Shown piece by piece: positions 1 through 51,600 of a stretch of DNA of 64,000 bases. Both the position numbers and the translations under genes were made by a program. The DNA is taken from NCBI GenBank assembly GCA_002269645.1, contig NIVC01000947.1, forward strand, positions 124,001 through 188,000. Reading direction: 5' to 3'. The DNA is from Macrostomum lignano. Its lineage: Eukaryota. A model generated the notes under the pieces. The model did not search any database. It had not been told where the DNA came from and saw nothing but the letters and a program-made list of their open reading frames with translations. Within the stretch, counting starts at the first letter, position 1; the number at the start of each line of letters is the position of its first letter.

Positions 1-945
1 CTTTTACAGATTCACCAACTCAAACTGTACACAGATTCACCAACTCACACTGTACAGATTCACCAACTCACACTATACAGATTTACCAACTCACACTGTA
101 CAGATTCACCAACTCACACTGTAAAGATTCACCCACTTGTACATTTACAGATTCACCCACTTGTACTTTTACAGATTCACCAACTCAAACTGTACACAGA
201 TTCACCAACTCACACTGTACAGATTCACCAACTCACACTGTACAGATTCACCAACTCACACTGTACAGATTCACCAACTCACACTGTACAGATTCACCAA
301 CTCACTATACAGATTCACCAACTCACACTGTACAGATTCACCAACTCACACTGTACAGATTCACCAACTCACACTGTACAGATTCACCAACTCACACTAT
401 ACAGATTCACCAACTCACACTATACAGATTCACCAGCTCACACTATACAGATTCACCAGCTCACACTGTACAGATTCACCAACTCACACTGTACAGATTC
501 ACCAACTCACACTGTACAGATTCACCAACTCACACTATACAGATTCACCAACTCACACTATACAGATTCACCAGCTCACACTATACAGATTCACCAACTC
601 ACACTATACAGATTCACCAGCTCACGCTGTACAGATTCACCAACTCACACTATACAGATTCACCAACTCACACTATACAGATTCACCAACTCACACTATA
701 CAGATTCACCAACTCACACTATACAGATTCACCAGCTCACGCTGTACAGATTCACCAACTCACACTATACAGATTCACCAACTCACACTATACAGATTCA
801 CCAGCTCACGCTGTACAGATTCACCAACTCACACTGTACTGATTCACCAACTCACACTATACAGATTCACCAGCTCACGCTGTACAGATTCACCAACTCA
901 CGCTGTACAGATTCACCAACTCACACTGTACTGATTCACCAACTT
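1..945. repeat. 23-bp minisatellite (TACAGATTCACCAACTCACACTG)n, about 40 copies, runs off the left edge
   Basis: Unit read directly, with G/A and A/G variants; explains the spurious 265-aa ORF 137..934. Confidence 0.95.
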
Positions 946-2099: not shown

Positions 2100-3080
2100 G
2101 ATGCACTCAGAGACATCTGTAAATGCATACTCGTAGAGACATGTATAAAATGCATAGAGGCATGTGTAAAATCTTATAAAGACATGTGCACAATGCATCG
2201 GAGTATCTGTAAAATGCATAGATACATCTGTAAAATGCATAGATACATCTGTAAAATGTATAGAGACATCTGTAAAAAGCATAGATACATCTGTAAAATG
2301 CATAGATGCATCTGTAAAATGCATAGATACATCTGTAAAATGCATAGATGCATCTGTAAAATGCATAGATGCATCTCCAAAATGCATAAATACATCTGTA
2401 AAATGCATAAATACATCTGTAAAATGCATAGATACATCTGTAAAATGCATAGATATATCTTTAAAATGCATAGATACATCTTTAAGATACATAGATACAT
2501 CTGTAAAATGCATAGATACATCTGTAAAATGCATAAATACATCTGTAAAATACATAGAGACATCTGTAAAATGTATAGAGACATCTGTAAAATACATAGA
2601 GACATCTGTAAAATGTATAGAGACATCTGTAAAATACATAGAGACATCTGTAAAATGTATAGAGACATCTGTAAAATACATAGAGACATCTGTAAAATGC
2701 ATAGATACATCTTTAAGATACATAGATACATCTGTAAAATACATAGAGACATCTGTAAAATGTATAGAGACATCTGTAAAATACATAGAGACATCTGTAA
2801 AATGCATAGATACATCTTTAAGATACATAGATACATCTGTAAAATACATAGAGACATCTGTAAAATGTATAGAGACATCTGTAAAATACATAGAGACATC
2901 TGTAAAATGTATAGAGACATCTGTAAAATACATAGAGACATCTGTAAAATGTATAGAGACATCTGTAAAATACATAGAGACATCTGTAAAATACATAGAG
3001 ACATCTGTAAAATGTATAGATACATCTGTAAAATGCATAGATACATCCATAAAATGCATAGATACATCTGAAAAATGCAC
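2100..3080. repeat. 21-bp minisatellite (AAAATGCATAGATACATCTGT)n, about 45 copies
   Basis: Unit read directly; length is a multiple of 3, which explains long repeat ORFs on both strands. Confidence 0.95.
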
Positions 3081-3475: not shown

Positions 3476-4336
3476 ATGACGACGCTGGAACTTCTCAGAG
3501 CGGCTCGAGACGGCCGCCTGTTCGATGTGAAGCGAAGCCTGCAATCGAGACTCTCAGTTGACTCCCTCGATGCCAGCAATCGGTCAGCACTTCACCGCGC
3601 GTCTAGCCGAGGCCACACGCTTGTGGTGCAGCTGCTGGTTGAGTCGCAGGCTCAAGTTGACAGTCAGAAGCTGGGCGGCTGGACTCCGCTGCACCTCGCC
3701 TGCCGGTACGGTCACGCCGATTCCGTCCGACTCTTGGTGATGTCGCAAGCCAGCTCCTCTGTGCAGGACAAAGACGGCATGACGCCGATCTTTGTAGCCG
3801 CTGAATGTGGCCACGCTGATGTGGTTCGACGCCTACTGGCAGCGGACGGCGCTGACTGCAGTCTGAGTCGGCGAGACACCGGCTGGACGCCGGCGCACGC
3901 GGCTGCCAAGTTCGGACACGCCGAGGTGCTGACAGAGCTGACCAGACACGCCGTTGCGGACCCGAACCTCCCGGACGTAGACGGTCGGACACCGCTTCAC
4001 GTCGCTGCTCAGTTCGGTCACGTCAGCGCCGTGTCGGCCCTGATCGCGGCCGGCGCGGAGCTCAATAGCAGAGACTCGACCGGCTGGTCGCCGCTGCATG
4101 CGGCAGCTTCGATGGGTCGCGTTGAAGTCGCCAAACTGCTGCTTGCCGAGGGCTGCCGGTCGGACGAGGCGGACAACAGCGGCGTAACAGCGGCCGAGGT
4201 TGCTGGCTGGTTCGGTCACGAGATCCTGGTGGACTTGCTGCTCAGTCAGCGCCTGTCTGGCTCAGCCAATGGAACTGACCACCGCGTTAACGGGCACTGC
4301 AACGCGATGCTGAGCGTGGGACATGTTCCCAGGTGA
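3476..4336 (+). CDS. Ankyrin-repeat protein (7 repeats plus N-cap, 286 aa if unspliced); possibly the N-terminal exon of an ANK-cGLR fusion
   Basis: Repeats SALHRASSRGH, TPLHLACRYGH, TPIFVAAECGH, TPAHAAAKFGH, TPLHVAAQFGH, SPLHAAASMGR, TAAEVAGWFGH at ~33-aa spacing. The stop TGA (4334-4336) overlaps a CAG|GTGATT donor-like site. Confidence 0.92.
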   Translation: MTTLELLRAARDGRLFDVKRSLQSRLSVDSLDASNRSALHRASSRGHTLVVQLLVESQAQVDSQKLGGWTPLHLACRYGHADSVRLLVMSQASSSVQDKDGMTPIFVAAECGHADVVRRLLAADGADCSLSRRDTGWTPAHAAAKFGHAEVLTELTRHAVADPNLPDVDGRTPLHVAAQFGHVSAVSALIAAGAELNSRDSTGWSPLHAAASMGRVEVAKLLLAEGCRSDEADNSGVTAAEVAGWFGHEILVDLLLSQRLSGSANGTDHRVNGHCNAMLSVGHVPR

Positions 4337-4461
4337 TTGTCGTTTTAAAATAGGTCAATACGCTTTAATTATTACGAAGGTTGGAGCTTGTGAAAGACCA
4401 CAACCCCCCCCTGACATCCTATAGTAGCCTCACAAAGTCGCACCACTGATACCAATCTCAG

Positions 4462-6777
4462 TTGTTCATCGCTCAGAAGAAACAATCACTGTGCACCAAT
4501 CTTGAACCCATTGGCAGCGATTCGGTGCTCAGCGCCAAGCTGAATGCTTCCCTGCAAGCTGCCGGTTTTGTCTCCGATCGAGCCGCCCTGCAAGTTGCCG
4601 TCTCCGAAGTTCTGCAGAGCATTTTACGACGCCGCTCAGATGAATATTTCACCAACATTGTAGGCAGCTACTCGGAGGGCTGGGGCAACAGCCTGACCTG
4701 CACGAGCGGCCGCACGGACCTCGACTCCGACATTGACATCACCGAGATTTTGCGGAACCGGCTGTTTCACATCCGCGGACGCTGCCAATGCAGAGTAGTA
4801 GAGTCGTCCGAGGAAACTGTCGACTACGAAGATGGACACGTCATTTGCACTGGCGCAGGTGAGTGACGAGGATTTTGATGGACGTTTTTCAAGAAAGAAA
4901 TCGAGGTCTCACAAGAAGCCGGCTTGCTATTATTCCACAAGGCTCTGGGTACGTACACCCCGAGCACACGGTTGCGTACGCAGACCGATTCCACTGACCC
5001 CTGAGCACGCTACCGCTCACACAGGGCGTGAAGCGGCATTGACCTTCAACCTCAGGTAGTGTTGCACGCTCTGTGCTGGTGATGTGCTCTGTCTGGAGAC
5101 CTAGACGGTCACTTCAATTGAACACCAATTCCCCCATGACGCACTCGGACTCTGAATCACCGATGGCACGCAAAACTTTTGGCCTTGTGTTGCTGAGTAT
5201 AAATCACCCTCACTCCATGTTGTTGCATTGATTTAATTGATGCCAGGGCAGGTCAAATGCCTTTTCTAGAATTAAAAAATTTCATCTAAGATACGCAATA
5301 GGTAAAAAACAAAAAGCATTCTCGCATTATTTCAGCATCGAACCCAGCTCAGGCCTGGGACGGTTCAGTGCTCAGACCGGCGAGCGATCGAGTCTGGGCC
5401 TTCCCCTGCTGCCGTTACCCTCCAATAGCCGTTCTCAAGAAGAATTACAAAACGCAAATCCGACTCCAAGTGCTGGATTCTTTACGCCGAGCACTGCCCA
5501 CCTGCCCGTGTCACCTCGTGGCGGCGGCCCCTCCAGGCCGAGGTGGCCAGCGCCTTCGGGTCAGCACGAACTTCCTGGAGCGAAGGCTCATGCGCAGCCT
5601 GACTAGCGAGCAGGGCCAGGTGTTCGTCATGCTCAAGTACATTATCAAACGGATCATCTCCCCGAAAATGGTCGGCTTAAAAACTTACCACGCAAAGACG
5701 CTGATATTCTACCTGTTGGACGAGACTCCGCCAGAGAATTGGCAGCCGAGCCAACTGGTGTCCTTGGTCAGAGCCGGGCTTCAAAGGCTCTGCTGCTCCA
5801 TGGAAGATCAGGGCTTGCACCCGCACCGCTGCGTGCGTCACTTCTTCCTGCGGGACGCTTGGCTGTACTTGAAGTCTGGACACGCCAAGAAACAAGCGCT
5901 AGTGAAATGCATCAGGGCTGCGATTGACCAGCTGCCCACCCTACTCAGTCAGTTCGAGTCAACTCTGCGTCCTCTACCTGCCGAGGCCGTCTTCACCTTT
6001 CACCCGTTCCTAATCATTCCAAATCTGACGCCGAGACCCATTGCGACTTCACGGTGTCCGGCATATCACGAGCTGTACGACACTGTGAGAGCACTATTTT
6101 CAATGCTCGATGACCACGGAGTTTCAGCTGAGTTCTGGGAGCTGATCAAGAGTCTGCCGAACAGTGCCAAGACAGCCCGGCTTTGCCTGACCGCCCTGGC
6201 TTTACTGAAGATTGGCAGAAACAATTCCGCCATTAAAACGCTGATGCAATTTTGCGACACTCAGAATGTTTACCGAGTGTCAAACGGTGCGCCGAGGTCG
6301 GCCCGTTCAGCTGCCGAAGTTTGGCGACACCTTGAAACCACCGACAATGCTTGGAAGTTTTGCTTCCGCTATAGCGAAAGACCCAATCTAAGTGGTTTCC
6401 TGCCAGACACAGTTGCCAGCCACTTTCCTGTCGTCATTGGGTACAACGAATGGTTCTACATCAACTTTATGGCACTAGCGAGATGTCTGTGTCTCCAGCT
6501 GAACATTGTCAGCGAGTCACTGGCTATGAAATGGTTCAAGCAGTATCTACAGCAGGATGACAGTGATGTTCAAGAACTGCTTCTGGTGCTTCAGTTCTGT
6601 CAGGATAAAGATCTGCTCATGCAGCTTATGCACTGCCACAGGACCGTGATCTGCCGTTACGAGGAGACCGTTGCTATGGTGGTGAAGCTGATGAAGACGC
6701 CTTCTGTAACATCCTTTGTCGAACAAATTGATGTTCGTCAGTCTGTGGGACGAGTGTTCGTCAGTCTGCGATCTTGA
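4462..6777 (+). CDS. Mab-21/cGAS-like nucleotidyltransferase (cGLR family); exons 4462-4858 and 5336-6777, 612 aa; start unresolved
   Basis: Catalytic motif VGSYSEG...DSDID in exon 1; phase-1 intron GCAG|GTGAGT...TTTCAG joins in frame; then DRVWAFPC, LKTYHAKTLIFYLLD and W...L...L..L...HFF motifs typical of the Mab-21 lobe. Confidence 0.88.
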
Positions 6778-7094
6778 AGTTTTTTCAAAGTGTCAATAAA
6801 CTTGTAACATGGAGTTGTCCATGCTGTTTCACATTTCTCTGTTGTTTGTAAATCTCAAATGATGTTTGGAAAATCATCGCATTCCACTTGCAAAATTATA
6901 TATTAAAATGCATATTATACTACTCTTAATGATAAGAATAGTAGCATAATCTTATAATGCCACTATAATGTTAAAAAGAAAATATACTTAAAAATGTTTT
7001 TATTAGTTGCTTCGCTTTCTCTGAATCACGGTCTATTTTAGATCGCAAAACAAGTTGAAAGCGTAAATAGCTAGAAAAAAATAGATATATATCT

Positions 7095-7393
<299 letters not shown>

Positions 7394-8220
7394 TATAAAT
7401 AGGGATGGAGAGAGCCGGAGAGGATAACGAGCGAGAGGGAGAGAAGAGAGAGGGAGAGAGAGGGAAATAAGAGAGGGAGATGGAGAGGGAGATAAGAGAG
7501 GAAAAGAATAGAGGGAGAAGGAGAAGGAGAAGGGGAGAGAGGTAGAAGTGGATGATAGGGTCAGCTGATAGAGAGTTTCCCAGCAGGCGAGATCCTGGTT
7601 TTCAAAGGGAGGGCTGTAAAAGTCAGTACAGCAAGAGCGCTCCAATCCGCTACCCCCAAGCCACGTGATGCCAGCCAGCAGTGGAAGGGCGCAGATGTTT
7701 ACAACCCAGTAATCCATAATTTTATTGAGCCTGGCAATTTTTATTGTTGTTAGGCCAAAGGCTTTCAATGAAGTTTCATTGTGAGCCTCACCCACGCTTT
7801 CCGTTCCAACAGAGAAAATGCCTATGCAGAGCTTGAGTAGCCCAGCCTCAGTTCTACCCTCAAACCCCACCCCATTTATACTTCACATATTTTTGCTTGC
7901 TCAGCCTGGGTCAGCATCGGCAGATGAGTACAGCTTGCCTGCTCTCACGGATTCACAGCACTACAACTCATAGCGACTCCGGGGGAGGGCGTCACAGAAC
8001 CCCGCATTGTCCATTAGTTGTACGCCAACTTACGCTCGTAACTTGAGTCTATTTTTAGAATTTTTCTTTCCAACACTATTGACTTCGCTTTCCCTTGGTC
8101 ATGGAGCTCTGAGGGTACCTATCTGGAGCTGGAGGAGGTGTGGCCTTTCTTTTGCCGACTTTTGCCACCTATAGGGCGTGGCATCCAACGCCCATGCAGA
8201 CAGGGATTAGGACGTCAAAT

Positions 8221-8541
8221 AAGAGACAGGATCACCCACCAAGAGACAGGGGCAACCCACCAAGAGACAGGGGTGATCACCAAGAGTCAGGGGTGACCAC
8301 CAAGAGACAGGGACAACCCACCAAGAGACAGGGGCGCCAACCAAGAGACAGGGGGCGCCAACAAGAGACAGGGGGCGCCCACCAAGAGACAGGGACAACC
8401 ACCGAGAGAAAGGGACAACCACCGAGAGAAAGGGACAACCCACCAAGAGAGGGAAGCTACCAAGAGACAGGGGGCGCCCACCAAGAGAGGGAAGACCACC
8501 AAGAGACAGGGGCGCCCAGCAAGAAACAGGGGCACCTACCA
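8221..8541. repeat. Degenerate 20-22-bp minisatellite (CACCAAGAGACAGGGGCGCC-like), about 16 copies
   Basis: Core CCAAGAGACAGG repeated with variable spacers; lies upstream of the tetraspanin gene. Confidence 0.85.
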
Positions 8542-8995
8542 AATGGCTCGAAGACACCAAATATTGACGGTCTTAGGGGCTGCTGTCCCCTCCAATAAAA
8601 AATTCCAGAGCACGCCGCTTCGGCCCCATACTACTTACTACCCACCAATCTGTGCATTCTGTTGTTATTATCGTTGCAGACAATGAGCAGAGAAATAAGC
8701 TAAGGCCACTCGGTTTCCACTCCAGATTGAATGATTTGAATCACCCTGCCCTGCGGAGCCCCCCTGGCCTCTCAGGTAAGAGTTTCTATTTGTTGACAGG
8801 CTTGGAGCGTATCCATGGGCGTTGAGTTGCATCGCTCAGAGTCCCAACCCCCCCTCCTCGTGACGCATCGCGCACACCAATTTATTTATTCAGCTCAGTC
8901 TAGAGGCGAAATTTCTGCTCCAAGCTTTTGGCATCATTTTTGACATTTGACACTGCAGAAGAAGAAAAACCAGCAAGAAGCAAAGCATTAGAAAC

Positions 8996-12791
<3,796 letters not shown>

Positions 12792-39134: not shown

Positions 39135-40303
39135 ATGTTTAACGAGAGAGAAGAGAGCCGGTGCAGCAGCCGGCTGGATCAGCACATCAGCAGTTCGAGA
39201 CCTGCAGCAGCATCGGCTGCCGCAGCAGCAGCGGTCAACGACCTTGGTCAGCAGATGCCGCGGCGAAGTGCGAGAAGCGAAGTGTCCGAAGACCCGCCAG
39301 ACGAGCTTCTGCCAGGTTTGGACGACCTCGGCCAGAACATCAGGCCCCAGGATGTGAGAACGATGATGGCAGCTCTGCAGCAGCAGATGGAGCGGCCGGT
39401 AAGCAAATCTGTTAAGATTGTAAAGTACACGCCCAGCCAGGACATCCACGTCTGGCTCGCCGCGTTCGAGCAGCGCTGCGAGATGGAGCGTATCGAAGAC
39501 CCGATCGAGATGAAGCAGCACCTCGTTGCGAGTCTAGATCTGGCAACCGCTTACCCGGCTCTGCTCAGTATGCACCTCCCACGCTATGCTGGCTACGAGG
39601 AGGTCAGGCAGCGACTGATCGAGAGATTCGCCCGCCACGGTGGCGCGGATGAATATCGAGAGCTGCTGAGGCGCCGTCAGCAAGGCAAGAACGAGTCAGC
39701 AGAAGAGTACGCTGATGCCCTGCGCACCTTGGGAGAGCGAGCGTACCCTCGAATGCACCCGAGGATCGAGAGCGGGAGCTGGCTGATCAGTTCCTAGCTG
39801 GCATCAGGACGACACCAGATCTGCGCGAGCGGCTCTATTGGGTCCGCCCGAACAATCTGCTGGCCGCTATTCGAGAACTCCATCGTCTGGAAGGCGCCAA
39901 GGAACTGGCGCAGCGCTCTGCTCAACCCCCGGTTCGCATGCTGAACGGGGAGCGCGACGGTGACCCGACGCCCGACGCCACCGCTCAAGCTCTCCTAGCT
40001 CTGACTGATCTGCTAGAGAAACAGCAGCGACTGCTAGACAACCTGGTGCAGCGTGACCAGCAGCAGAAAACGAGTCCGCCGGCGAAAGCCATGATCTGCT
40101 ATGGCTGTGGTCAGCCTGGTCATCGCAATGCACAGTGCCCGTTACGCCAGAACCAGGGAAACGGCGAGACGGAGAGCGCCCACGGCAACGCCCTCCGCAG
40201 AGCCCAAGCCCCGGCTACTTGGCAGACTCCGAACGCTCACCAGAAGAAGAGGATGTCGGCTGCGCAGACGCCAATGCCCAGTCCGACAGTCGCTCATCAG
40301 TAA
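39135..40303 (+). CDS. gag: Gag with CCHC knuckle; one 1-bp frameshift near 39755
   Basis: WLAAFEQRC capsid-like segment; frame resumes as PEDRERELADQFLAG; CYGCGQPGHRNAQC. Confidence 0.85.
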
Positions 40304-43300
40304 GTGAGGCTGAGTGCGGAGGTTTCGTGGACACCTCCGATGATCAAAAAATCCATGCGCGTGAGGCTGATCCGTACGTCACCGGCCGATTGGCGGGCCG
40401 AGAAGTCCCTTTCCTACTAGACAGCGGCAGTCGGAAAAACTTTCTTGGAGCGTCGACCTGGGCCAATGTTAGACGTCGGATGCCTCGTTGTATCATATCG
40501 CATGCTATCCCGGATTGCGTGACCATGTACGACGGTACGCAGCTACCCCTTGCGTGTAAGGTGATCATCCCGGTGGAGTTCGGTGATGTCGTCGCGGACA
40601 CCGAATTCCTGGTCACGGTCACCGATTGTGAAAATTTGCTTGGTATTAATTTCATGCGTGAACACTGCCAGAACTTGGACTTTGCTCAAGGAATGTTAAA
40701 GTTCAACAATGGCGCGTGCATTCCCGTTCGCTATTCGCGCCGTGAGCTTCAATCATGCCGGGTGTACACCTCCGAGAAGTGCACTCTGCCGCCGAGAAGT
40801 TCAGCGCTGTTGGCCGTCCAGTTGGATGTCGGCCACCCCGAGAACCGAGGATCGCCATCAATCGTCGAGCTGGTGAAGTCGAGACTGCACCCCAGCTGCA
40901 ACACTCTGGAAGCAGCTCCAGCTCTGATGACTATGCCTGAAGGTCGAGGCTACATCGAGGTCGTCAACACTGCTGACTGTGAGGTGTTCCTGCAGTCGGG
41001 CATCCGCGTTGGTGTTGCGACACCACTTAGAACTGCCGACCTGATGTACCTGGAAGAGACGCCGGAACCTGAAGTGCGACATTTGCCAAGGAGCCCTGAA
41101 GAGTCCAGCACAGCTTGGCTAGAGGAAGTCGAGATCAACAGCGAGCTGTCCGAAGATCAACGACAGAGAGTGCGAGATCTACTAGTTGAGTGTCAAGCAG
41201 CCTTCTCGAAGCATCTGCTAGACGCTGGCCTGACACACCTGGTGACCCACGAGATCATCCTGAAGGATCGGACACCAGTTGCGCTACCACCGCGCAGGAT
41301 CCCGCCTCATCTGAAGGACAAGCTAGACGCCCTGCTAGACGAGATGCTGGCGAAGCACATCATTCGCCCGGCTTATTCTAGCTACAACTCGCCAATGCTG
41401 ATAGTGCCCAAGAAGGACGGCAACATCAGGCTGGTGCATGACTTCAGAGCTCTCAACGACAAGTGTGTGTACCACCCGTACCCGCTGCCGCACATTCAGG
41501 AGACCTTCGCGAAGCTGCGTGGTGCCCAGTGGTACTCTAGCTTGGATCTCGCTCAAGGATTCTGGCAGATCCCGCTGCGCGACTGCGATCAGCACCTGAC
41601 GGCGTTCTCTGTGATTGACCGCGGACAATTCTGTTTCAATGTTCTACCGATGGGTCTCCACGATAGTCCAGGCAGCTTTCAGCGTTGCATCAATAAGCTC
41701 CTGGACGGCCTGACGCCAAAGACTGCGCTTGGCTACATGGATGACATCGTGGTGCACTCTGTGACCTTCGAGGAGCAGCTGGACAACCTGCGGACTGTAC
41801 TCCAGCGGATTATCGCAGCCAACCTCAAGGTCAAGCCGAAGAAGTGCCATTTGTTCCTCAAGGAGCTGCATTATCTAGGCCACGTCGTGACTCCCGACGG
41901 CCTGAAGACCTGTGAGGACAAGATTGCGCAGATCCGTGATTGGCCCGTGCCACAGTCCGTTACTCAACTGAGACAATTCCTAGGCCTCGCCAATTACTAC
42001 CACAAGTTTGTCAACGGCTACGCTGGATTTGCTGCGCCGCTACATGCCCTGACTCGAAAGGACATCGGCAGCCTGCGGCAGCATTGGACTGATGAGCACC
42101 AGGTAGCGTTCGACACGTTGAAGAAGAAGTTGTGTTCGACTGAAGTTCTCGCTCTGCCTGAGTTTAACTCAGATCCTAATGTGAAGTTTGTCCTAGACAC
42201 GGATGCCTCAGACATTCGCATAGGCGCTTGTCTTGGACAACGGCAATCCGACGGCGTCGAGCGCCCAATTGCATTCTTTAGCCGGAAGCTTCGTGATCCT
42301 GAGAAGCGCTACACGGTCACGAAGAAAGAGCTGCTTGCAATCGTGGACGCGATGCGACATTTCCGTCATTATTTAATCGGCAAGAAGTTTGAAGTTCGTT
42401 CTGACCATCGGGCCTTGCTGTGGCTGCTGAACCAGACGCAGGTCACAGGCATCTTGGGCCGTTGGATTGAGCGATTAAGCGAGTTCCGCTTCCAGCTTCA
42501 CCATCGCAAAGGCAAGGACCACGCCAACGCTGACGCCCTGTCAAGACGCCCGGAGACACCACCGGTTGACTTCGAGCACGGCCGACTGCTTGAGCATCCC
42601 GATTCTGCAGCCCGACACGATGATGACACCAGCTTGGAGCCGGACCTGGACACCACCGGAAGGCCACTGCAAGACCAGCCCTTTCGAAGAAGGTCCACAC
42701 TCGCAACAAGGAGGCCGAAACTGCCCTGGCCGAAGACCTGGAGGCCACTGCGCCAGCAGTCCTTCAGCACGACAACCATCGCTGCAGTCAACGCCTGGAG
42801 ACCGGTTTGGACACCAACCCGGAGGCCACTGACACCTCAGCCCTCCGCAGCGACGCCCACGCCGACTGCCGTTACTTGGAGATTCGCCCGGACAAACCCT
42901 CGGAGGCCACTGCTGACGTAGACCTCCTTGATGATGTCCAAGACTGCGGGTCTCGGAATCTGGAGACGCCCATGGACCACGACTCAGAGGCCACTGAACA
43001 AGCAGCCCTTCTGATGACAGCCCACAACGCGAATCCAGACCAGCAATGTAAGTTCAACTCCCCGGAGTTTTGCGCTGAGAGTTCTCGCCGTGTTGACAGA
43101 GGCCATACTCTCGCGACGGCTGCAAGGTCAACGCTCTGTCCCCCGAGCCGACAGACAGCTGCTCATCGCCTGTGCGGACAGTCGAGTCCCCCTTTGCGAC
43201 ACCGCCCAGTGCTGGAGAAGACTCACCCAATGACGACGATGATCGAGCCGACGGCTACGGCTGCTTGTGACGAGGCGTGCTTCACGTGTTGCGTCTCGCC

Positions 43301-46300
43301 CTACAGCCAAGAGTCGCCTGGGCTGTGCAGTGGAGGCAAGTGCACTGCTCCAGCTGCGGAAATTCCTGTCAAGAGAGCGACGATGAGAACTTCGAAACGA
43401 GATCAGCGATCGTACGCCGACGTTGTGAAACAAAGTCCCTCGGAGCGACCTAATCCTGACGCCGACAAGACGGAGTCGTGTGATCAACTGCGAGCCACAG
43501 AAGCGGAGACTGCGGGAGTCATGAACCCTCAGCCATGCCGCGCCGTGCTCACCGATTTTATGAGGTTGCCGATGACGCGGCAACAGTTTGTCGACGCGCA
43601 GCGCGCCGACCGAGCAATTGGCTATGTGCTCAACTTGGTCGAGAACAAAGCCCCGAAGCCTGAGTTCGACACCCGGTTGCGACTGACGAAGGAGCAGCGG
43701 AACCTGCTCGGATATTATGATAATCTGCTAGAGGACAACGGCCTGCTGATGATCGACCTGACCGACGGCCAGCAGTCCCCGAAGGTTGTCCTGCCTGAGT
43801 CTCTTGATGCCCAGGTGCTCCAGGAGCTCCACAGTTCGCCACTGTGTGGACACCTCGGCCAGACGAAGACGTTGAAGCGGCTACGTGAACGATTCTGGAG
43901 GCCCGGATTAGCCCGTGTCACCGAGAACTTTATCAGTAAGTGCCGCGCCTGTCTTGAAAGTAAATCCCGAAGACGAGACCGAGTACCTGTACAGAGCTTC
44001 CCTGTGTGCGAAGTTCTGGGAAGAGTACACTGCGATGTAGTAGGCCCTATCGCCCAGAAGAGCAAGAGCGGGAACTGCTACATCTTGACGCTATGCGACG
44101 CGACGTCGAAGTACCCGTTCGCCTATCCGATGAGGAACCAGAAAGCCAAGACGGTCATCAAGATCCTGCAGGAGCGCTTGATCCCTGACTTTGGTGTACC
44201 ATGCTGGATACACACTGATCAAGGAACCAATTTCACTGGCTCAGCGTTCAAGAAGTTCTGTGACCTGTTTGGCATCCGGCATACGACGACAACACCGTAC
44301 AACCCAGCTTCTAATGGGCAAGTCGAGAACCTCAACAAGCAGCTGAAGAGTGTCCTCACCTGCCTCCTCGAGCGCAACCATAACGACTGGGACACCTTCC
44401 TCCCAGCCTGCTTGATGGCGCTCCGCTCTAGTGTACACCCGGTGACAGGTTTCACGCCTCACTACCTGGTGTTTGGTCGAGACTTTCGACTACCAATCGA
44501 CAACGCGATCAAGAAGCTGCCGGAGTATGCCGATCTGCCTGACTATGTCAAGGACTTCCAGCGCCGCTTAGACGAAGCGACTGAGCTAGCTAAAGAACGC
44601 CTACATCTGCATCAGCAACTGCGCGACGAGCACTATTCGAACCTGCCCGCTGCCAAGAAGCTCCAACCTGGTGACCTGGTTTTCCTCAACAACCCGGTGC
44701 TCGAACCGGATGAAGCGGCGAAGTTCCATCGACCTCGCAAAGCGCTGTACGAGGTAGTCGAACCCAAGGGCGAGGTCGTCTACAAGATTCGCCGTAGAGT
44801 GCCAAACCCGCGGGCCAGGCGCGACGAGCTAGTAGTCCATCGCCGGAATCTGCTACTCGTCCCTGATGCCGACTACCAGCTGACTTCGGATCCAGAAGTC
44901 GACCAGGCCAAGAAGCGCTGCAGGTTGGCTGATGCCCCGGACGGTGCAGGACCCGCGACTCTGACACCGATTCCGGAGGACGATCCGGACGAGGACGATG
45001 ATGATGATGACGCATGGCCGGCCTTCCGGTGGCGCTTCCGGCCGTTGGCGATCCCGGATGTGCAGCCAGGAGGTGGACCGGTCACGACACCAGCGAACCA
45101 GGCAAGTGCATTTCGGCGTGAGCCACTGCCGTATGGTGATCGCCATGATGGTGTGCCTGGTTTGAATGCGTCTGCACATGTTGCTCCTTTTTCACCTGCC
45201 CACGCGTCCCCCTTTCCCGAACCTTTTTCTGCGGCGCAGTCTCCTGCGCCACCTTCTTGCACCACTCCGGTGGAAGCGTCTCCCATACCAGTAGTGGTAG
45301 GTAGGCCAGTTAGGGATCGGAGGCCGCCCGAGAGGCTTCTGATTAGCGATCCTAGGGCTAAAACGTACGTTAGTCGCACCGCCCGCATGCGTGTGCACAA
45401 ATTAAAACCTTGCAGCGCAGAAATGCACAAGCGACAGCACCAGCCGACTCCAAGCTCGTCATCCGAGAGTGACCAGGGCCGGCCCAGCCGGAGCCGCCGA
45501 AGGCCAGGCACCCCGTCCTCCCCGGAGGTCATGGGCATTCCGCGCCGGCCTCTCGCCACTCGCCAATTGGCCCAAGTGGAGGGCCGTGAGCATCCAGAGC
45601 GTCCGCCTCGACGCGGACGGGAGCACGGCCGGCGAAGCGACTCGCCGTCGCCAGAACCGCGGCGGAGCCGGCCAAGCCGCAGATCACAGGACACCGTCAG
45701 GGCTGAAGCCCCTGAAGTGATCGATCTAACGGCTGATTCCCCGCCGGAGGTCAGCAGTGTTCGCCGACTCATGGCCCAGCGGTTGGCCGCGGCTTTTGCC
45801 TACGTCCAACTGGAGCAGGAGGTCAGCCGAGGCCTCCAAGCGGTCCGCCGCCACATTGCTGATTCTTTTTCAGGAGCGGGACCAGAAGCCCTGGGTGCAG
45901 CCCGCCATCATGATCCTGGCGAAGCCACGGGTGCCGGACTCCGGAACGCGCCGCCGCCAGGGATCCATTATGCGCAGGCGGAGTCGCCGATGTCGATCGC
46001 CGACGGCGTTCCGCCGCCAAGTAGCGTCCACGGAGATCCAGACCCGCCGAACGACCCGTGGGACGGCCTTGGGGAAGCGTTGGGCCGCGAGCTGCCCCGC
46101 GCCCCGCCGCCCACGCCGGCGGACCCGCCACTACTGGTGCATGTCAGCACCCAGACCAGCGAGCTACCGGATGATGACGGACGAGCGGCGCTGCTGACTG
46201 CCGCCTCTTGCCTGGCGAGTAATCTGTTAGGCAGCGCAGCCCGCCACGGACACGTACCGGCTGTGCTCGCGGGCCCTATCTGGAACAGCCTGCCCCAGAC

Positions 46301-46481
46301 TACCGTCATTGAACGCATGACCATTATGGAAGAGGCTGTTCGCCTGAGCGGCTCTGATCTGCAGCCGCCGCTGCGCCCTTACGCCGCGCACCATGCCGCG
46401 CTGGTCGTGATGCGACACCTCGGCGGCAGCGAGGCAGAGCTGCCTGCGGTCCTGGCTCGCCCTCCGCTGGACTATCTGTAA
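40135..46481 (+). CDS. pol: Pol (protease, RT, RNase H, spacer, integrase, long C-terminal extension); one 1-bp frameshift near 42650
   Basis: LLDSGS; YMDD; DTDAS...DH...ADALSR; H..H..CRAC zinc finger; VHCD / IHTDQG / QVE DDE triad; GPY/F-like region. Confidence 0.93.
40156..40195 (+). promoter_or_regulatory. Programmed -1 ribosomal frameshift signal (G GGA AAC plus downstream stem)
   Basis: Slippery heptamer 40156-40162 in gag phase; pol is the -1 frame; stem CGGAGAGCG/CGCCCTCCG begins 7 nt downstream. Confidence 0.75.
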
Positions 46482-48632: not shown

Positions 48633-51600
48633 TCAGTTCTGCTTGCCGATGAGCTGGCGCAGAACAATGTTTCTCGTCCGTCCGCCTGGAGCCCGAACTT
48701 GAACGCCATCGGCACTCCGCGCACGACTCAGAGCCACGTAGAGCTGGCCATGCTGAAAGCAGGCCGTCGCCAGGTCGACGGCGTAGGTGCTCAGCGTCTG
48801 GCCTTGGCTACGGTGGATGGTCATGGCGAAGCACAGCCGGATCGGGAACTGCAGGCGGCGGAAGGTGAAGGGCAGCTCGGTTGGACTCGGCTTCTGAGGG
48901 ATCCGCGGGATGAAAACCTGCCACCCGCGGTAGACGCCCGTGGCGACCTCCGCGAGCAGGACGTTGTCCCGCAGTTCGCGCAGCAGCAGCCGGGTCCCGT
49001 TGCACAGCAGCGGAGGGTCCAAGTTCCTGGTCATCATGACCGGCATGCCGACCTTCAGCTCTAGCCGGTGATGTGGCAGGCCGTTGGGGTCCAGCCGGTT
49101 CAGCAGCTCCGGCGGGAAGTTGGTCGCTGCCGTGTCGTCATTCGGAATCGAGTCGACCGACAGGTAGACCCGACTCTCGCCGGGGAAGAGCGCCAAGCAG
49201 GCGGCGTTGGCTTCGTCTACCGTCTTGTTGAGCGGTGATAAAATGCTCCGCTCCGCGAACATCTGGTCACGGTCGGGGCTGGGCTCAAACGACGGGTAGA
49301 CGTGTTGGATGAGCTGCTCAGTAGTTGTGTCATCAGGCATGAGAATCTCGCTAGGCAAGGAAACCATTCCCTCTTCATCCTCTGGCAGCTCGCCGTTGCC
49401 AACCTAGCAGATAGAGTGATATGCGAAAGTGCATTATAATGTAATATTTTTACTGATCCTATGGGTTCCTATGGGTTAATGTAAAAATACCATATTTAGT
49501 TTTTAAGTTTTAATATTTTGATTTGATAAATACGATATGTATTGACACGGCACAATACGAAGGAGCATCAAAAGAAATCAATCACCTGCATGAGAAAATC
49601 TGCGTAGCCCTGGAAAGCAGAACCGCTCTCCAACCGCAGATTTTTTGTCAGATGGTGCCTTCGGAAGTGCGGCCACAACTCCGACCGAGTCAAACAGGCC
49701 TCGATGGTGTTGGCATGCGTTCCTCCGGGAACCACAGCCAGCAGCTGGCGAAAGTCGCCAGCCAGCACCAGCAGCGCTCCTCCGAACGGCCGGTCGTTGC
49801 GCAGCAGATCCCGCAGAGACCGCTCGACCATCTCCAGGTCCTTGCGGTGCGTCATCGGCGCTTCGTCCCAAACAATGAGCCGCGTGTCCCGCAGCATCTC
49901 AGCCAGCTTGCTCCGTCGGCCGATGGAACAGAAGGCATTGTCGAGACGCACCGCGCTGACGGGAATCTTGAACCTGGGCAGGTTGAAACAGCATTTATAT
50001 GCAGAGACAATAATATAATTTGCAGAAGTACTGCATGTACATGTAAGCATGATCTTAAAAGAAAAAAACAGAAAATGGCTTATCCTCTAAAAATATTTGA
50101 TGTCATTCAAGTTATTATCAAGTTTAAATAAAAAAATCCAAGTTATTTTGACATTTTAATTTCTTAGTAAACAGTTTTTTAAAGATTTTGAAGACAACTC
50201 ACATGGAATGTGCGGTCCTTCCCCCGGGAAGAATGGTTGCCGCAATTCCAGACGACGCCACGGCAACAGCGATCTGACGCCTTGCTCGAACGCAGTTCAG
50301 CAGCAACGTCAGCAAGAACGTCTTTCCTGTTCCGCCGGGGGCATCGATAAAATGCAGTCCAGCGCCGCCGGTCTCCAGATTGGACTGCACGGCCTCAAAA
50401 ATCATTCGCTGCTCTTCAGTAAGCATGCCGATCTGGGCCTGGACTTCCGCGTGGATCTCAGCGGCTTCTTGCGGTGTCGGCAGGCAGTCGGAATGCTGGC
50501 GACTCTGAGAAAATAAATTCAACTTTCAGCGTTCAAGTTCAAGTGCGCTTTCGATATGGATTTCGGATAATACTAAATAAAGATTAAAGGAAATTCACCT
50601 GATCTGGCTGAACATGAGGCTCAGGCAGTCCGTAGGCAGGCAGCTCAGCGCCTCCCATGGTGTCCAGCAGTTTCTGCAGCTCTCGCAGAACCTCCGACTC
50701 GGCAGCCTCAGGGCTATAGCCTTGGTGCAGCAGATCACCGGCCAACTCGCCGGAGAACTCCTGCCACAGCTTTGCCGGGTCGCTGGAGTCGCCGTGCGAC
50801 AGAATGGCAGCGAAAAGGCGGCGCAGAGCCGCTGGCAGCCGCGTCTCCGAGGCTTCGCACAGGCACAGTCGCCAGTGCCTGTCGTCCTCCAGGAGTCCGC
50901 GGGCCTGGCAGGCGGCCTTGAAAGTCGGCAGCAGGACGCCGTCTACGGTGCGCAACGCCTCAAACGACGTCGGGCCGCGCACATTCACCAGCAGCAGGCG
51001 CAGGTAGAAACAGTCTCCCATCCGAGGGCTGACTGTATAGACGCGGCCGATGTTGCCAGTCGTCAGCACGCCAGCTGGCTGATCAGCAGCGACTCGGCCG
51101 CGACCTGCGCGATGCCACTGGTGCGCACTTCTGTCCCAGGTGAAGTGCCGGGGCACCTCCTGGTACAGCAGGCCTCGTGCAACGGCATCCTGGCGGCAGA
51201 GCTGCGAGATTAAGATTTTGATAAGAGAATTAAAAGTCACAGTTGTCATTTTAAAGTAAATTTTACCAATATGAGGTCTTAATTTTCAGAAATAACTTAC
51301 ATCAAAAAAGGCGGTCAACGTCGTGGGCTTAGGCTGAGCAGCAACAGCCTGAGCTGTCTCGGGCGTGAAGCAGACGCGCTGGTCGTCCTTCAGATGAACG
51401 GCCAGCCTGATGACAGCCGGATACCGACTGTGTACTTCAAAGCCCAATATGGTGTTAACCGCCTCCATAGGACCAATGTACCGGCCCAGAAGGTACTCCT
51501 TGATCTCATCGACCTCCTTGCGCTTCGCCGGCGCCGCCTTAGTCTGAGCTGACTGCTGGGGCTGCTGATCGCCACTGGCCTGAAGAGCCGCCGCATCGCT

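What the first reader, a model, noticed from the sequence alone, without database searches (positions are those of the whole stretch)
3476..6777. Ankyrin ORF and cGAS-like enzyme form one reading frame split only by a single UGA
Seen: the ANK stop (4334-4336) overlaps a CAG|GTGATT donor, the same donor sequence used by Helitron exon 8 in this window. A CTGAC branch-like motif (4411-4415) precedes a TAGTAG acceptor (4422-4427). Splicing out 4333-4424 gives ...VP-S-SLTKSHH-TGA(4447-4449)-YQSQ-LFIAQ..., exactly in frame with the cGLR catalytic exon, i.e. a 910-codon ANK-cGLR fusion with one internal stop. Established: cGLRs are animal innate-immune sensors making cyclic dinucleotides, and accessory domains can set ligand specificity. 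Inference: this may be a switchable two-product immune locus (ANK-only sensor or decoy versus read-through ANK-cGLR enzyme), a fusion recently split into a two-gene unit, or simply a nonsense allele or sequencing error.
Basis: partly seen in the sequence, partly recalled or inferred. Interest (0 to 1): 0.85.

Follow-up and report, generated by a model that had tools for sequence, protein, structure and literature searches.

The report
Flatworm ankyrin-cGLR gene, one premature stop
The ankyrin ORF and the cGAS-like ORF are exons of one ordinary three-exon gene from a large, already catalogued flatworm (Macrostomum) family of ankyrin-cGLR fusions, and the one internal stop codon is most likely a recent knock-out mutation, not a programmed switch.

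Summary
The sequence observation is correct at every coordinate. The interpretation needs trimming.

**One gene, shown.** Homologues occur almost only in the flatworm Macrostomum lignano. They form a large family, and nearly all full-length members are ANK repeats + linker + Mab21/cGAS-like domain in one protein. I mapped ten M. lignano gene models onto their genomic DNA.
- Eight of the nine ANK-fusion loci have a phase-2 intron in the ANK-to-Mab21 linker.
- All ten have a phase-1 intron where the window has 4859-5335.

**The ANK "stop" is trivial.** A phase-2 GTRA donor always reads through as xxG-TRA. TGA 4334-4336 is simply part of the conserved donor.

**The open point is UGA 4447-4449.**
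- With the acceptor at 4425/4428 it lies in frame, seven to eight codons into exon 2. This gives a family-typical 92-95 nt intron, and with 4428 an exon 2 of 431 nt, as in the closest homologue.
- With the weak acceptor at 4518 it is intronic, giving a stop-free 879-aa protein.

**My lean (these sum to about 0.85; the remainder is unassigned):**
- young null allele or pseudogene, about 0.45
- UGA intronic, about 0.2
- fission via a spliced-leader AUG, about 0.1
- sequence error, about 0.08
- read-through or selenocysteine, about 0.02

No SECIS element, read-through context or downstream RNA structure was found. Li et al. 2023 already listed this family among predicted cGLRs. Low novelty.

The parts
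3476..4332 (+). Exon 1: start ATG, about 7-8 ankyrin repeats, and the first 27 aa of the linker. It ends with 2 nt of a split codon (phase 2).
   Evidence: Pfam Ank_2 E=2.1e-73. Collinear with the ANK domain of P0001/P0184 from the first Met. Exon 1 is 857 nt here and 884 nt in the closest homologue.
4333..4338 (+). Phase-2 splice donor GTGATT. TGA 4334-4336, the apparent ANK stop, is part of this donor.
   Evidence: The homologous phase-2 GTRA donors in 8 M. lignano loci all read through to xxG-TGA or xxG-TAA. M. lignano-trained PWM score is 6.1, at the low end of the M. lignano range of 6.0-10.4.
4333..4427 (+). Intron 1, short version: 92 nt to AG 4423-4424, or 95 nt to AG 4426-4427. It contains the CTGAC branch-like motif (4411-4415) and a C8 tract.
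   Evidence: GC 0.41 against 0.64 in exon 1. The length falls in the modal 69-130 nt class of M. lignano introns. With exon 2 starting at 4428, exon 2 is 431 nt, the same as exon 2 of the closest homologue P0184.
4428..4858 (+). Exon 2, favoured boundary (4425 also possible). It holds the variable linker leader, the N-terminal spine helix and the NTase motifs GSYSEGWGNS (4663-4692) and DSDIDI (4723-4740).
   Evidence: GC3 periodicity in the Mab21 frame over 4426-4518 is weak (GC1/2/3 = 0.42/0.39/0.61, Fisher p = 0.045).
4447..4449 (+). In-frame TGA in the non-conserved linker leader, 7-8 codons after the acceptor. Context is CAC TGA TAC.
   Evidence: No stop at this place in any M. lignano paralogue that I mapped or inspected.
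4446..4461 (+). A second well-formed acceptor: CTGAT branch-like motif plus CAATCTCAG, with the exon starting at 4462. It is out of phase for the cis donor. It is in frame with the Mab21 ORF if a spliced leader ending in AUG is added. AG 4475-4476 (exon start 4477) lies in the same frame.
   Evidence: PWM 7.8, the best acceptor in the region and comparable to the window's intron-2 acceptor at 8.0. The M. lignano SL ends in ATG.
4516..4517 (+). Alternative in-phase acceptor AG (GGCAG|CGA), with the exon starting at 4518. It would make intron 1 185 nt, place the UGA in the intron and give a stop-free 879-aa fusion.
   Evidence: it is the best stop-free donor/acceptor pair. It puts the intron 15 aa before the xGF motif, as in P0045. 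The acceptor is weak: PWM 1.7, below all 23 M. lignano acceptors, and pyrimidine fraction 0.53.
4859..5335 (+). Intron 2 (477 nt, phase 1, CAG|GTGAGT...TTTCAG).
   Evidence: A phase-1 intron lies at the same position, after GH....G, in all ten mapped M. lignano loci.
5336..6777 (+). Exon 3 (1442 nt including stop TGA 6775-6777). It holds the third catalytic Asp region RPASDRVWAF (5374-5403), the Mab21 C-lobe and a helical C-terminal extension of about 250 aa.
   Evidence: Pfam Mab-21_C E=3.8e-6. PDB profile hits are cGAS/cGLR only. The AF2 model and Foldseek agree. Exon 3 of P0027 is also 1442 nt.
6795..6800 (+). AATAAA polyadenylation signal, 18 nt after the stop.
   Evidence: There is no AATAAA or ATTAAA between 4337 and 4520, only TTTAAA at 4344.

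Best explanation
**What it is.** This is one three-exon gene: exon 1 3476-4332, exon 2 4425/4428-4858, exon 3 5336-6777, with AATAAA at 6795. It belongs to the Macrostomum family of ankyrin-repeat + Mab21/cGAS-like (predicted cGLR) fusion proteins. The window comes from a congener of M. lignano.

**Shown.**
- Domain order, start codon and both intron positions and phases match the M. lignano paralogues exon for exon.
- The TGA that closes the 'ANK ORF' is only the GTGA of the conserved phase-2 donor.
- The NTase motifs (GS...DxD...D) and every other codon of the roughly 900-codon frame are intact.

**Inferred.**
- The pre-mRNA is spliced 4332 to 4428 (or 4425), as in the closest paralogue. This leaves UGA 4447-4449 in frame in the fast-evolving linker.
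- This copy is therefore most likely a very young null allele or pseudogene (about 0.45). It would make at most a 293-294-aa ANK-only protein from a message that carries a downstream exon junction, and so is an expected target of nonsense-mediated decay.
- If the weak in-phase acceptor at 4518 is used instead (about 0.2), the UGA is intronic and the gene is an ordinary full-length 879-aa ANK-cGLR.

Either way the stops arise from normal gene structure or decay, not from recoding. The confidence given (0.75) is for that umbrella claim: null copy, intronic UGA or sequence error, as opposed to a functional two-product design.

**Expected function of an intact copy (inferred from family knowledge).** The ANK domain would bind a ligand or partner and control a cGAS-like nucleotidyltransferase that makes a nucleotide second messenger.
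For: **Family and architecture.**
- 12 of 13 hits are M. lignano proteins. The best, P0001, is a complete 936-aa ANK-Mab21 fusion (E=2e-142, 44% identity, 92% coverage).
- 70 cluster representatives score E<1e-30. In most, the Mab21 match starts at residues 240-1000 of proteins 820-1575 aa long. Those I read carry ANK repeats.
- The alignment is collinear from Met1 to the C-terminus.

**Gene structure.**
- Exact mapping of ten M. lignano models shows a phase-2 junction intron in 8 of 9 ANK-fusion loci. It lies 15 to 37 aa before the xGF motif wherever that motif is present.
- A phase-1 intron homologous to 4859-5335 occurs in all ten.
- The donors read AG|GTGA, GG|GTGA, TT|GTGA, CT|GTAA and so on. 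All give an immediate read-through stop.

**Acceptor choice.**
- The 92-95 nt intron is in the modal length class.
- Exon 2 from 4428 is 431 nt, equal to exon 2 of P0184.
- GC3 periodicity over 4426-4518 in the Mab21 frame is reached by only 0.8-5.8% of non-coding control windows.

**No recoding signals.**

**Fold.**
- PDB profile hits are exclusively cGAS or cGLR.
- The AF2 model has pLDDT 75.7 and pTM 0.78.
- All Foldseek hits with E <= 0.02 are MAB21L1, cGAS, Sp-cGLR1 or MB21D2, at probability 1.00.
Against: - No transcript data could be consulted, so the acceptor is not established.
- All three in-phase acceptors score poorly on an M. lignano-trained matrix: 4425 = 2.2, 4428 = 4.8, 4518 = 1.7, against an M. 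lignano range of 3.8-14.3.
- A random nonsense hit would fall in this short leader only about 1-3% of the time. In contrast, an intronic UGA or a functional domain split predicts that location.
- There are no further lesions in about 2.7 kb of coding sequence. A pseudogene would therefore have to be very young, under roughly 1% neutral divergence by my rough estimate.
- Codon-usage log-odds for 4450-4518 are intermediate between exon and intron values.
- The periodicity statistic is noisy in M. lignano controls.
- The leader shows no significant similarity to the leaders of the closest paralogues (p = 0.2-0.6).
Confidence: 0.75

Rival explanations
1. Ordinary intact fusion gene. Intron 1 runs 4333-4517 (185 nt) and uses the in-phase acceptor GGCAG|CGA. 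The UGA and the TAGTAG site lie inside the intron, and the product is a stop-free 879-aa ANK-cGLR. (This is a sub-variant of the umbrella explanation, listed separately because it changes the verdict on the UGA.)
For: - This is the best-scoring stop-free donor/acceptor pair and uses the conserved donor.
- It places the intron 15 aa before xGF, exactly as in P0045 and within the family range of -15 to -37.
- Exon 2 would be 341 nt, against 311-368 nt in seven paralogues.
- GC steps from 0.46 (4425-4517) to 0.57 (4518-4858).
- Detectable homology starts at query residues 22-26, which is position 4518.
- 4 of 23 M. lignano introns skip internal AGs that score as well as the one used.
- It explains why nothing else in the gene is broken.
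Against: - The acceptor is weaker than all 23 M. lignano acceptors (PWM 1.7, pyrimidine fraction 0.53) and has no good branch motif.
- It would have to beat two well-formed upstream acceptors, 4425/4428 and 4462, both of which give non-productive mRNAs.
- The GC3 periodicity of 4426-4518 leans towards coding.
- The closest subfamily has a long exon-2 leader (-37/-41), not a short one.
Confidence: 0.2
2. A fusion gene caught in fission. The stop in the linker ends an ANK-only protein. The Mab21 part is expressed separately by spliced-leader trans-splicing at 4461|4462 (or 4476|4477), and the leader's terminal AUG supplies an in-frame start codon. The locus would then behave as a two-cistron, operon-like unit.
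For: - The 35-nt M. lignano SL ends in ATG. About 30% of M. lignano genes are trans-spliced, and operon spacers peak near 100 bp.
- SL sequences are conserved across Macrostomum.
- Flatworm SL AUGs are documented initiator codons.
- Acceptor 4462 is the best in the region (PWM 7.8) and has its own CTGAT branch motif.
- Both 4462 and 4477 are in frame with the Mab21 ORF, which has no ATG of its own before 4640.
- The spacer from 4337 to 4461 is 125 nt.
- A genuine stand-alone Mab21 family member exists in M. lignano: P0196, with its own ATG and no ANK within 5 kb upstream.
- It explains both the location of the stop and the intact ORFs on each side.
Against: - The frame match has a 1-in-3 chance expectation.
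- The acceptor only partly fits the reported trans-splice motif [T/C]TNCAG.
- There is no AATAAA or ATTAAA for an upstream cistron, only TTTAAA at 4344.
- The upstream donor at 4333 would normally favour cis-splicing.
- No SL-bearing reads are available to me.
Confidence: 0.1
3. Assembly or base-calling error, or a heterozygous SNP captured in the assembly. The real codon at 4447 is a sense codon (CGA, TGG and others are one step away), and the gene is an intact 909-910-aa fusion.
For: - A single-base difference would restore a frame that is otherwise perfect over about 2.7 kb.
- The gene structure with the 4428 acceptor matches the closest paralogue.
Against: - Substitution errors are rare in polished assemblies. 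The usual errors are homopolymer indels, and none is needed here.
- This cannot be tested without reads.
Confidence: 0.08
4. One reading: programmed UGA read-through or selenocysteine insertion. This would give an ANK-only product by termination and a full ANK-cGLR by recoding.
For: - A single UGA lies in a linker between two intact domains.
- UGA is the leakiest of the three stop codons (general knowledge).
Against: - There is no SECIS or any other Rfam match, and the 3' UTR to the AATAAA is only about 20 nt.
- The context UGA-UAC is not a known read-through context.
- The 121 nt around and after the UGA fold no better than shuffles (z = -0.93).
- No mapped or inspected M. lignano paralogue has a stop in the leader.
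- The first 'stop' is a donor artefact.
Confidence: 0.02

Closest known systems
Macrostomum lignano ANK-Mab21 proteins, closest cluster A0A1I8J3D3 / PAA55664.1 (BOX15_Mlig031018g1; P0001/P0184)
   Same: - ANK domain of about 255 aa starting at the same Met, variable linker, Mab21 core and helical C-terminal extension.
- 44% identity over 92% of the Mab21 part.
- Shared subfamily motifs: CHLVAAAPP, EQGxVF, FYLLDETP, RDAWxYLK.
- Phase-2 junction intron and phase-1 intron at the same places.
- Exon 2 of 431 nt, identical in length to window 4428-4858.
   Different: - The window copy has an in-frame TGA seven codons into exon 2 (counting from 4428). The M. lignano copies are open throughout.
- Intron 1 is 1048 nt there and 92-95 nt (or 185 nt) here.
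- The linker sequences are not alignable.
- The species differs: a shared repeat is 81-84% identical to the M. lignano copies, while those copies are 93-95% identical to each other.
Animal cGAS-like receptors with appended ankyrin repeats (Li et al. 2023, 'cGLRs are a diverse family of pattern recognition receptors', bioRxiv 10.1101/2023.02.22.529553 / PMC9980059)
   Same: - ANK-cGLR is a listed minor domain architecture, for example in the coral S. pistillata.
- Their Table S3 of screened proteins includes M. lignano family members. These are PAA86972.1 and PAA45980.1. The latter is in the cluster of P0045, whose locus I mapped.
   Different: - No M. lignano enzyme is mentioned in their main text, so product and ligand remain unknown.
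[quoted passage not shown]
- The family here also has a helical extension of about 250 aa after the Mab21 domain.
Human cGAS, MAB21L1 and MB21D2; S. pistillata Sp-cGLR1 (PDB 6ct9, 5eom, 7lt1, 8gjy)
   Same: - Bilobed Mab21/NTase fold: Foldseek probability 1.00, TM up to 0.53 normalised to the target.
- The profile hits only these proteins.
- The GS...DxD...D pattern is present by sequence.
   Different: - Only 12-22% identity.
- The Pfam N-terminal Mab-21 model does not match.
- The GS-to-DxD spacing is about 20 residues, longer than the 9-13 I recall for cGAS-type enzymes.
- The NTase lobe of the model is low-confidence (pLDDT < 50 in 61-67, 85-100 and 114-133).
- There is an extra ANK N-terminus and a helical C-terminus.
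Flatworm spliced-leader trans-splicing with the SL 3'-terminal AUG as initiator (Cheng et al. 2006, cited in PMC9851317; M. lignano SL in PMC8629364)
   Same: - An acceptor with a branch motif lies 125 nt after the ANK read-through stop.
- The Mab21 ORF has no ATG of its own.
- It is in frame with an SL-donated AUG at 4462 and at 4477.
   Different: - There is no evidence of trans-splicing at this locus.
- There is no canonical poly(A) signal for an upstream cistron.
- A strong cis donor lies upstream.

Membership tests
Macrostomum ANK-Mab21 (predicted cGLR) gene family | N-terminal ankyrin-repeat domain followed on the same strand by the Mab21 domain, collinear with family members | tested here: met
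   ANK E=2e-73. The full-length alignment to P0001 and P0006 runs from Met1 to the C-terminus.
Macrostomum ANK-Mab21 (predicted cGLR) gene family | Family-specific conserved motifs: GSxxEGWGNS, DSDID, CHxVxAAPPG, LKTYHAKT, HFFxxDAxxYLK, DSAWKF | tested here: met
   All are present, and invariant columns are shared.
Macrostomum ANK-Mab21 (predicted cGLR) gene family | Conserved gene structure: a phase-2 intron in the linker and a phase-1 intron after the GH....G motif | tested here: met
   The junction intron is present in 8 of 9 fusion loci, and the second intron in all ten mapped loci. The window's donor phase and its second intron both match.
Macrostomum ANK-Mab21 (predicted cGLR) gene family | Uninterrupted reading frame across the junction | tested here: inconclusive
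   Interrupted by TGA 4447 with acceptor 4425/4428, but open with acceptor 4518. The acceptor actually used cannot be determined without RNA data.
cGAS-like receptor (cGLR) / Mab21 nucleotidyltransferase | Mab21/cGAS bilobed NTase fold | tested here: met
   Pfam Mab-21_C scores 27.4 bits against a cut-off of 24.1. The 15 PDB profile hits are all cGAS or cGLR, best E=3e-4. All Foldseek hits with E <= 0.02 are MAB21L1, cGAS or cGLR at probability 1.00 and TMt 0.4-0.53. The model is of medium quality (pLDDT 75.7).
cGAS-like receptor (cGLR) / Mab21 nucleotidyltransferase | Catalytic G[GS]...[DE]x[DE]...[DE] residues in place | tested here: inconclusive
   The pattern is present by sequence (GS at 4663, DID within 4723-4740, D in RPASD at 5374-5403) and is conserved in the family. 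I obtained no residue-level superposition on cGAS. The N-lobe of the model is low-confidence and the GS-to-DxD spacing is unusually long.
cGAS-like receptor (cGLR) / Mab21 nucleotidyltransferase | Ligand-activated synthesis of a nucleotide second messenger that signals to STING or another receptor | not testable with these tools
   This needs recombinant enzyme assays. M. lignano relatives were in the Li et al. screen list but are not reported in their main text.
Programmed stop-codon read-through / selenoprotein gene | SECIS element in the 3' UTR (for Sec) | tested here: not met
   Rfam at gathering thresholds and with E<=1 found no SECIS. The 3' UTR to the AATAAA is about 20 nt.
Programmed stop-codon read-through / selenoprotein gene | A read-through-promoting context or a downstream RNA structure | tested here: not met
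   The context is UGA UAC. The fold of 4440-4560 has z = -0.93.
Programmed stop-codon read-through / selenoprotein gene | The stop codon conserved at the same place in homologues | tested here: not met
   The exon-2 leaders of all mapped or inspected M. lignano paralogues are open. Orthologues from the window's own species or sister species were not available.
Flatworm SL trans-spliced operon | Downstream cistron begins at a 3' splice site about 100 nt after the upstream cistron, in frame with or followed by a start codon | tested here: met
   Acceptor 4462 has PWM 7.8. The spacer is 125 nt, and an SL AUG would be in frame. This holds at sequence level only.
Flatworm SL trans-spliced operon | Polyadenylation signal for the upstream cistron in the spacer | tested here: not met
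   There is no AATAAA or ATTAAA in 4337-4520, only TTTAAA at 4344.
Flatworm SL trans-spliced operon | SL-bearing transcripts mapping to the acceptor | not testable with these tools
   No RNA data from the source species are available. No SL RNA gene lies in the window.

The most novel reading that the evidence does not exclude
The locus is a domain-fusion immune gene in the act of splitting. A stop codon in the linker terminates a free ankyrin protein. A spliced leader trans-spliced at 4462 or 4477 donates the AUG for a free cGLR enzyme. One pre-mRNA would then yield sensor-like and enzyme modules separately. A related version has alternative 3' splice sites (4428 versus 4518) toggling between a truncated ANK-only product and the full fusion.
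Probability: 0.1. Interest if true: 0.6.

Novelty: new member of a known kind. Interest (0 to 1): 0.25.

Why it matters
As it stands this is an annotation result. It shows how to read the locus as one three-exon ANK-cGLR gene, and it shows that a stop overlapping a phase-2 GTRA donor is no evidence of a separate gene.

It also documents, with exact intron maps, that Macrostomum flatworms carry a large ANK-cGLR family with a conserved junction intron. This matters because most platyhelminths are reported to lack cGLRs beyond Mab21-like proteins.

If the minority reading were true (gene fission through a linker stop plus a spliced-leader AUG), it would be a neat natural example of how trans-splicing lets a fusion gene separate into two cistrons. 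It would also give a natural with-and-without-ANK comparison for cGLR regulation.

Tried and rejected
1. **Paralogues inside the window.** None found.
2. **Stop-free fusions through other donors.**
   - AGC|GTGGGA at 4316 to 4462 or 4477 works on paper, giving 892 or 887 aa.
   - The donor scores 1.7, against at least 6.0 for all M. lignano donors, and it breaks the conserved phase. Rejected.
   - Donors inside the last ANK repeat (4229 and others) were rejected for the same reason, and because they delete repeat sequence.
3. **Cis-splicing 4332 to 4462.** This causes a frameshift and a stop after about 25 codons. Rejected as the productive form.
4. **An internal ATG for a stand-alone Mab21 protein.** The first in-frame ATG (4640) would remove the N-terminal spine helix. 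Unlikely.
5. **Homology between the window's exon-2 leader and the leaders of P0001, P0184 and P0006.**
   - The 'SLC' match is not significant (p = 0.2-0.6).
   - It cannot decide whether the leader is coding.
6. **Codon-usage log-odds for 4450-4518.** The value is intermediate between exon and intron distributions. Uninformative.
7. **GC3 periodicity.** It leans towards coding, but the same statistic separates M. lignano leaders from intron tails poorly. I count it as weak evidence only.
8. **Looking for the window's own proteins or transcripts in the protein collections.**
   - The exact ANK ORF is absent.
   - No Mab21 hit exceeds 54% identity, and full-length matches are about 47% or less.
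   - No same-species evidence is therefore available.
9. **SL RNA gene in the window.** Absent.
10. **P0001 genomic locus.** Not on record. I used its NCBI cluster mate P0184 instead.

Full report
**1. The observation**

- The ANK ORF runs 3476-4336 and ends in TGA 4334-4336.
- That TGA overlaps CAG|GTGATT, with the donor G at 4333.
- CTGAC is at 4411-4415, and TATAG|TAG provides AGs ending at 4424 and 4427.
- Splicing 4332 to 4425 reads ...VP-S-SLTKSHH-TGA(4447-4449)-YQSQLFIAQ... in the frame of the downstream ORF.
- A second intron (4859-5335, CAG|GTGAGT...TTTCAG) joins the last exon (5336-6777).
- The whole is 910 codons with one internal stop.

Pfam finds strong ankyrin repeats in the first ORF (Ank_2 E=2e-73). 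In the second it finds only the C-terminal Mab-21 domain (27.4 bits, cut-off 24.1).

The frame match alone is weak evidence. It has a 1-in-3 chance expectation, and only 23 codons are open before detectable homology begins.

**2. Relatives**

A search with the Mab21 part found 13 proteins.
- 12 are from the flatworm Macrostomum lignano.
- The other sits on a 1-kb contig labelled as a bacterial MAG.
- The best hit, P0001, is a complete 936-aa protein with ANK repeats followed by the Mab21 domain.

An exhaustive HMMER scan gave 248 cluster representatives, 70 of them at E<1e-30. In most, the match starts several hundred residues into a protein of 820-1575 aa. Those I read carry ANK repeats.

The window's conceptual product is collinear with P0001 and P0006 from the first methionine to the C-terminus. 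It shares their subfamily motifs.

The 'Mab21-only' UniRef models P0003 and P0004 are truncations of 1102-aa and 1082-aa NCBI fusions. They begin at the first full codon of exon 2. One genuine stand-alone Mab21 member does exist: P0196, with its own ATG and no ANK within 5 kb upstream.

The window is not M. lignano itself. An interspersed repeat at 9108-9370 is 81-84% identical to four M. lignano copies, and those copies are 93-95% identical to each other. A congener is the likely source.

**3. Gene structure in M. lignano**

I fetched eleven loci from assembly GCA_002269645.1. I solved the exon structure of ten of them exactly, so that each reproduces its annotated protein. The exon structure of L007/P0042 was also solved, but its introns were not placed relative to the conserved motifs.

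Eight of the nine ANK-fusion loci have a phase-2 intron in the linker. The split codon lies before the xGF motif at these distances:

| Protein | Distance before xGF (aa) |
|---|---|
| P0045 | 15 |
| P0020 | 18 |
| P0017 | 19 |
| P0046 | 19 |
| P0191 | 22 |
| P0027 | 23 |
| P0184 (closest subfamily) | 37 |
| P0193 | comparable position (motif absent) |

P0028 lacks this intron. All ten loci have a phase-1 intron after GH....G, homologous to the window's 4859-5335.

The junction donors are AG|GTGAAA, GG|GTGAGT, TT|GTGAGC, CT|GTAAGA, TT|GTAAGC, CG|GTAAGC, CG|GTAAGA and GA|GTGAGT. Because the intron is in phase 2, each reads through as xxG-TGA or xxG-TAA. In P0027 the read-through is literally AGG TGA, as in the window.

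The 'ANK stop' is therefore an automatic consequence of a consensus donor in phase 2. It is no evidence for a separate ANK gene. This settles that the two ORFs are exons of one ancestral gene.

**4. Where is the acceptor?**

Only acceptors whose first exon base is at a position divisible by 3 are compatible with the conserved donor. These are 4425, 4428, 4518 and 4533.

- The intron length of 92-95 nt falls in the modal M. lignano class of 69-130 nt (15 of 23 introns).
- It has a perfect branch motif and a C-rich tract.
- Exon 2 from 4428 is 431 nt, the same as in P0184.
- The leader of 45 aa compares with 37-41 aa in the closest subfamily.
- GC at codon positions 1/2/3 over 4426-4518 is 0.42/0.39/0.61 (Fisher p = 0.045). 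Such a skew occurs in only 0.8-5.8% of non-coding control windows.

Evidence for 4518:
- It gives a stop-free 879-aa product and is the best stop-free pair.
- It places the intron at -15, as in P0045.
- Exon 2 would be 341 nt, against 311-368 nt in seven paralogues.
- GC steps from 0.46 to 0.57 exactly there.
- Detectable homology begins there.
- It explains why nothing else is broken.

Evidence against 4518:
- Its acceptor (PWM 1.7, pyrimidine fraction 0.53) is weaker than all 23 M. lignano acceptors.
- It would have to win over two well-formed upstream sites.

Uninformative or weak tests:
- Codon-usage log-odds for the leader are intermediate.
- The periodicity statistic is noisy in M. lignano controls.
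- The leader has no significant similarity to paralogue leaders.

I cannot decide this without RNA. I lean towards 4425/4428.

**5. Meaning of the UGA if it is in the mRNA**

No recoding signal is present.
- There is no SECIS or any Rfam match.
- The 3' UTR is about 20 nt long, with AATAAA at 6795.
- The context is UGA-UAC.
- There is no structure downstream of the UGA.
- No paralogue has a stop in the leader.

The simplest reading is a nonsense mutation in a fast-evolving linker. It must be very recent, because the other roughly 900 codons and the NTase motifs are intact. Such an mRNA would have an exon junction 411 nt downstream of the stop, so nonsense-mediated decay is expected (general knowledge). 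At most an ANK-only protein of 293-294 aa would result. An assembly error or a segregating SNP gives the same picture.

**6. A mechanistically concrete alternative**

Macrostomum uses spliced-leader trans-splicing.
- The 35-nt leader ends in ATG, about 30% of genes are trans-spliced, and operon spacers peak near 100 bp.
- The leader is conserved in the genus.
- Flatworm SL AUGs can act as initiators.

The best-scoring acceptor in the region is 4462 (PWM 7.8, with its own CTGAT branch motif). It is out of phase for cis-splicing. It is in frame with the Mab21 ORF for an SL-donated AUG, as is 4477. The Mab21 ORF has no ATG of its own before 4640.

A linker stop plus an SL acceptor would split the fusion cleanly into two products. 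Three points count against this:
- The frame match has a 1-in-3 chance expectation.
- The spacer holds no AATAAA or ATTAAA.
- The strong upstream donor favours cis-splicing.

I give it about 0.1.

**7. Is it a cGLR?**

A family profile hits only cGAS and cGLR chains in the PDB (best 8gjy, E=3e-4). An AlphaFold2 model of the Mab21 part has pLDDT 75.7 and pTM 0.78, with a weak N-lobe. By Foldseek, all hits with E <= 0.02 are MAB21L1, Sp-cGLR1, cGAS or MB21D2, at probability 1.00 and TM up to 0.53.

The GS...DxD...D pattern is present. I obtained no residue-level superposition, and the GS-to-DxD spacing is long. Fold membership is met; catalysis is untested.

**8. Novelty**

- ANK-cGLR fusions are a described minor architecture (Li et al. 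2023).
- That paper's list of screened proteins already contains M. lignano members of this family. One is PAA45980.1, from the cluster of P0045.
- None is discussed in their main text.

The window therefore holds a new, probably disabled, member of a known kind. What I add is the conserved exon map, the explanation of the donor-overlapping stop, and a concrete set of splice alternatives to test.

**9. Verdict**

| Reading | Probability |
|---|---|
| Young null allele or pseudogene | about 0.45 |
| UGA intronic | about 0.2 |
| SL-mediated fission | about 0.1 |
| Sequence error | about 0.08 |
| Recoding | about 0.02 |

Interest 0.25.

Noticed in passing
window 5-944 and 2134-3079: Two long minisatellites: a 23-bp unit with 40.7 copies and a 21-bp unit with 45 copies. 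They generate spurious ORFs of 265-355 aa on both strands, seen.
   Followed up: partly
window 7095-7402: A nearly perfect (ATAG)77 microsatellite, followed by a GA-rich low-complexity stretch at 7429-7542.
   Followed up: no
window 8221-8542; L009 7908-8548: A tandem array with a 20/41/61-bp period. It is about 77-79% identical to an array just downstream of the M. lignano stand-alone Mab21 gene P0196. It appears to be a satellite shared across Macrostomum species.
   Followed up: no
window 9108-9370; L001, L007, L008, L009: An interspersed repeat of about 260-280 bp present near four of the M. lignano ANK-Mab21 loci. It is 81-84% identical to the window's copy, while the M. lignano copies are 93-95% identical to each other. 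I used this as a species clue; the element itself is uncharacterised.
   Followed up: partly
window 39135-46481 (+): Long ORFs of a Ty3/gypsy-type LTR retrotransposon, carrying RT, RNase H, integrase zinc-binding and integrase core domains, in a GC-rich block (0.56-0.60). Its ends and LTRs were not examined.
   Followed up: no
window 48633-53724 (-): A Helitron-like helicase (Pif1 2B domain) broken into several ORFs, separated by what look like short GT...AG introns with T-rich CAG acceptors. The second CAGGTGATT of the window is at 49580-49588.
   Followed up: partly
window 58635-59855 (-): A 406-aa ORF with an N-terminal BED zinc finger (E=9e-10), possibly derived from a transposase.
   Followed up: no
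protein P0010: A 347-aa member of this flatworm family is deposited as a hypothetical protein of a 'Kangiellaceae bacterium' MAG, on a 1065-bp contig. It is probably eukaryotic (flatworm-like) DNA binned into a bacterial genome.
   Followed up: no
proteins P0014 and P0002: Some M. lignano models contain two Mab21 units in tandem, with ANK repeats between them. These may be real multi-cGLR fusions or merged neighbouring genes, which would suggest tandem arrays of the family.
   Followed up: no
L008 6472-6999 (P0184): The NCBI model of the closest homologue has an extra 3' exon that adds a hydrophobic tail of about 175 aa. This tail is absent from the UniRef model P0001. It may be an alternative end or an annotation read-on.
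   Followed up: no
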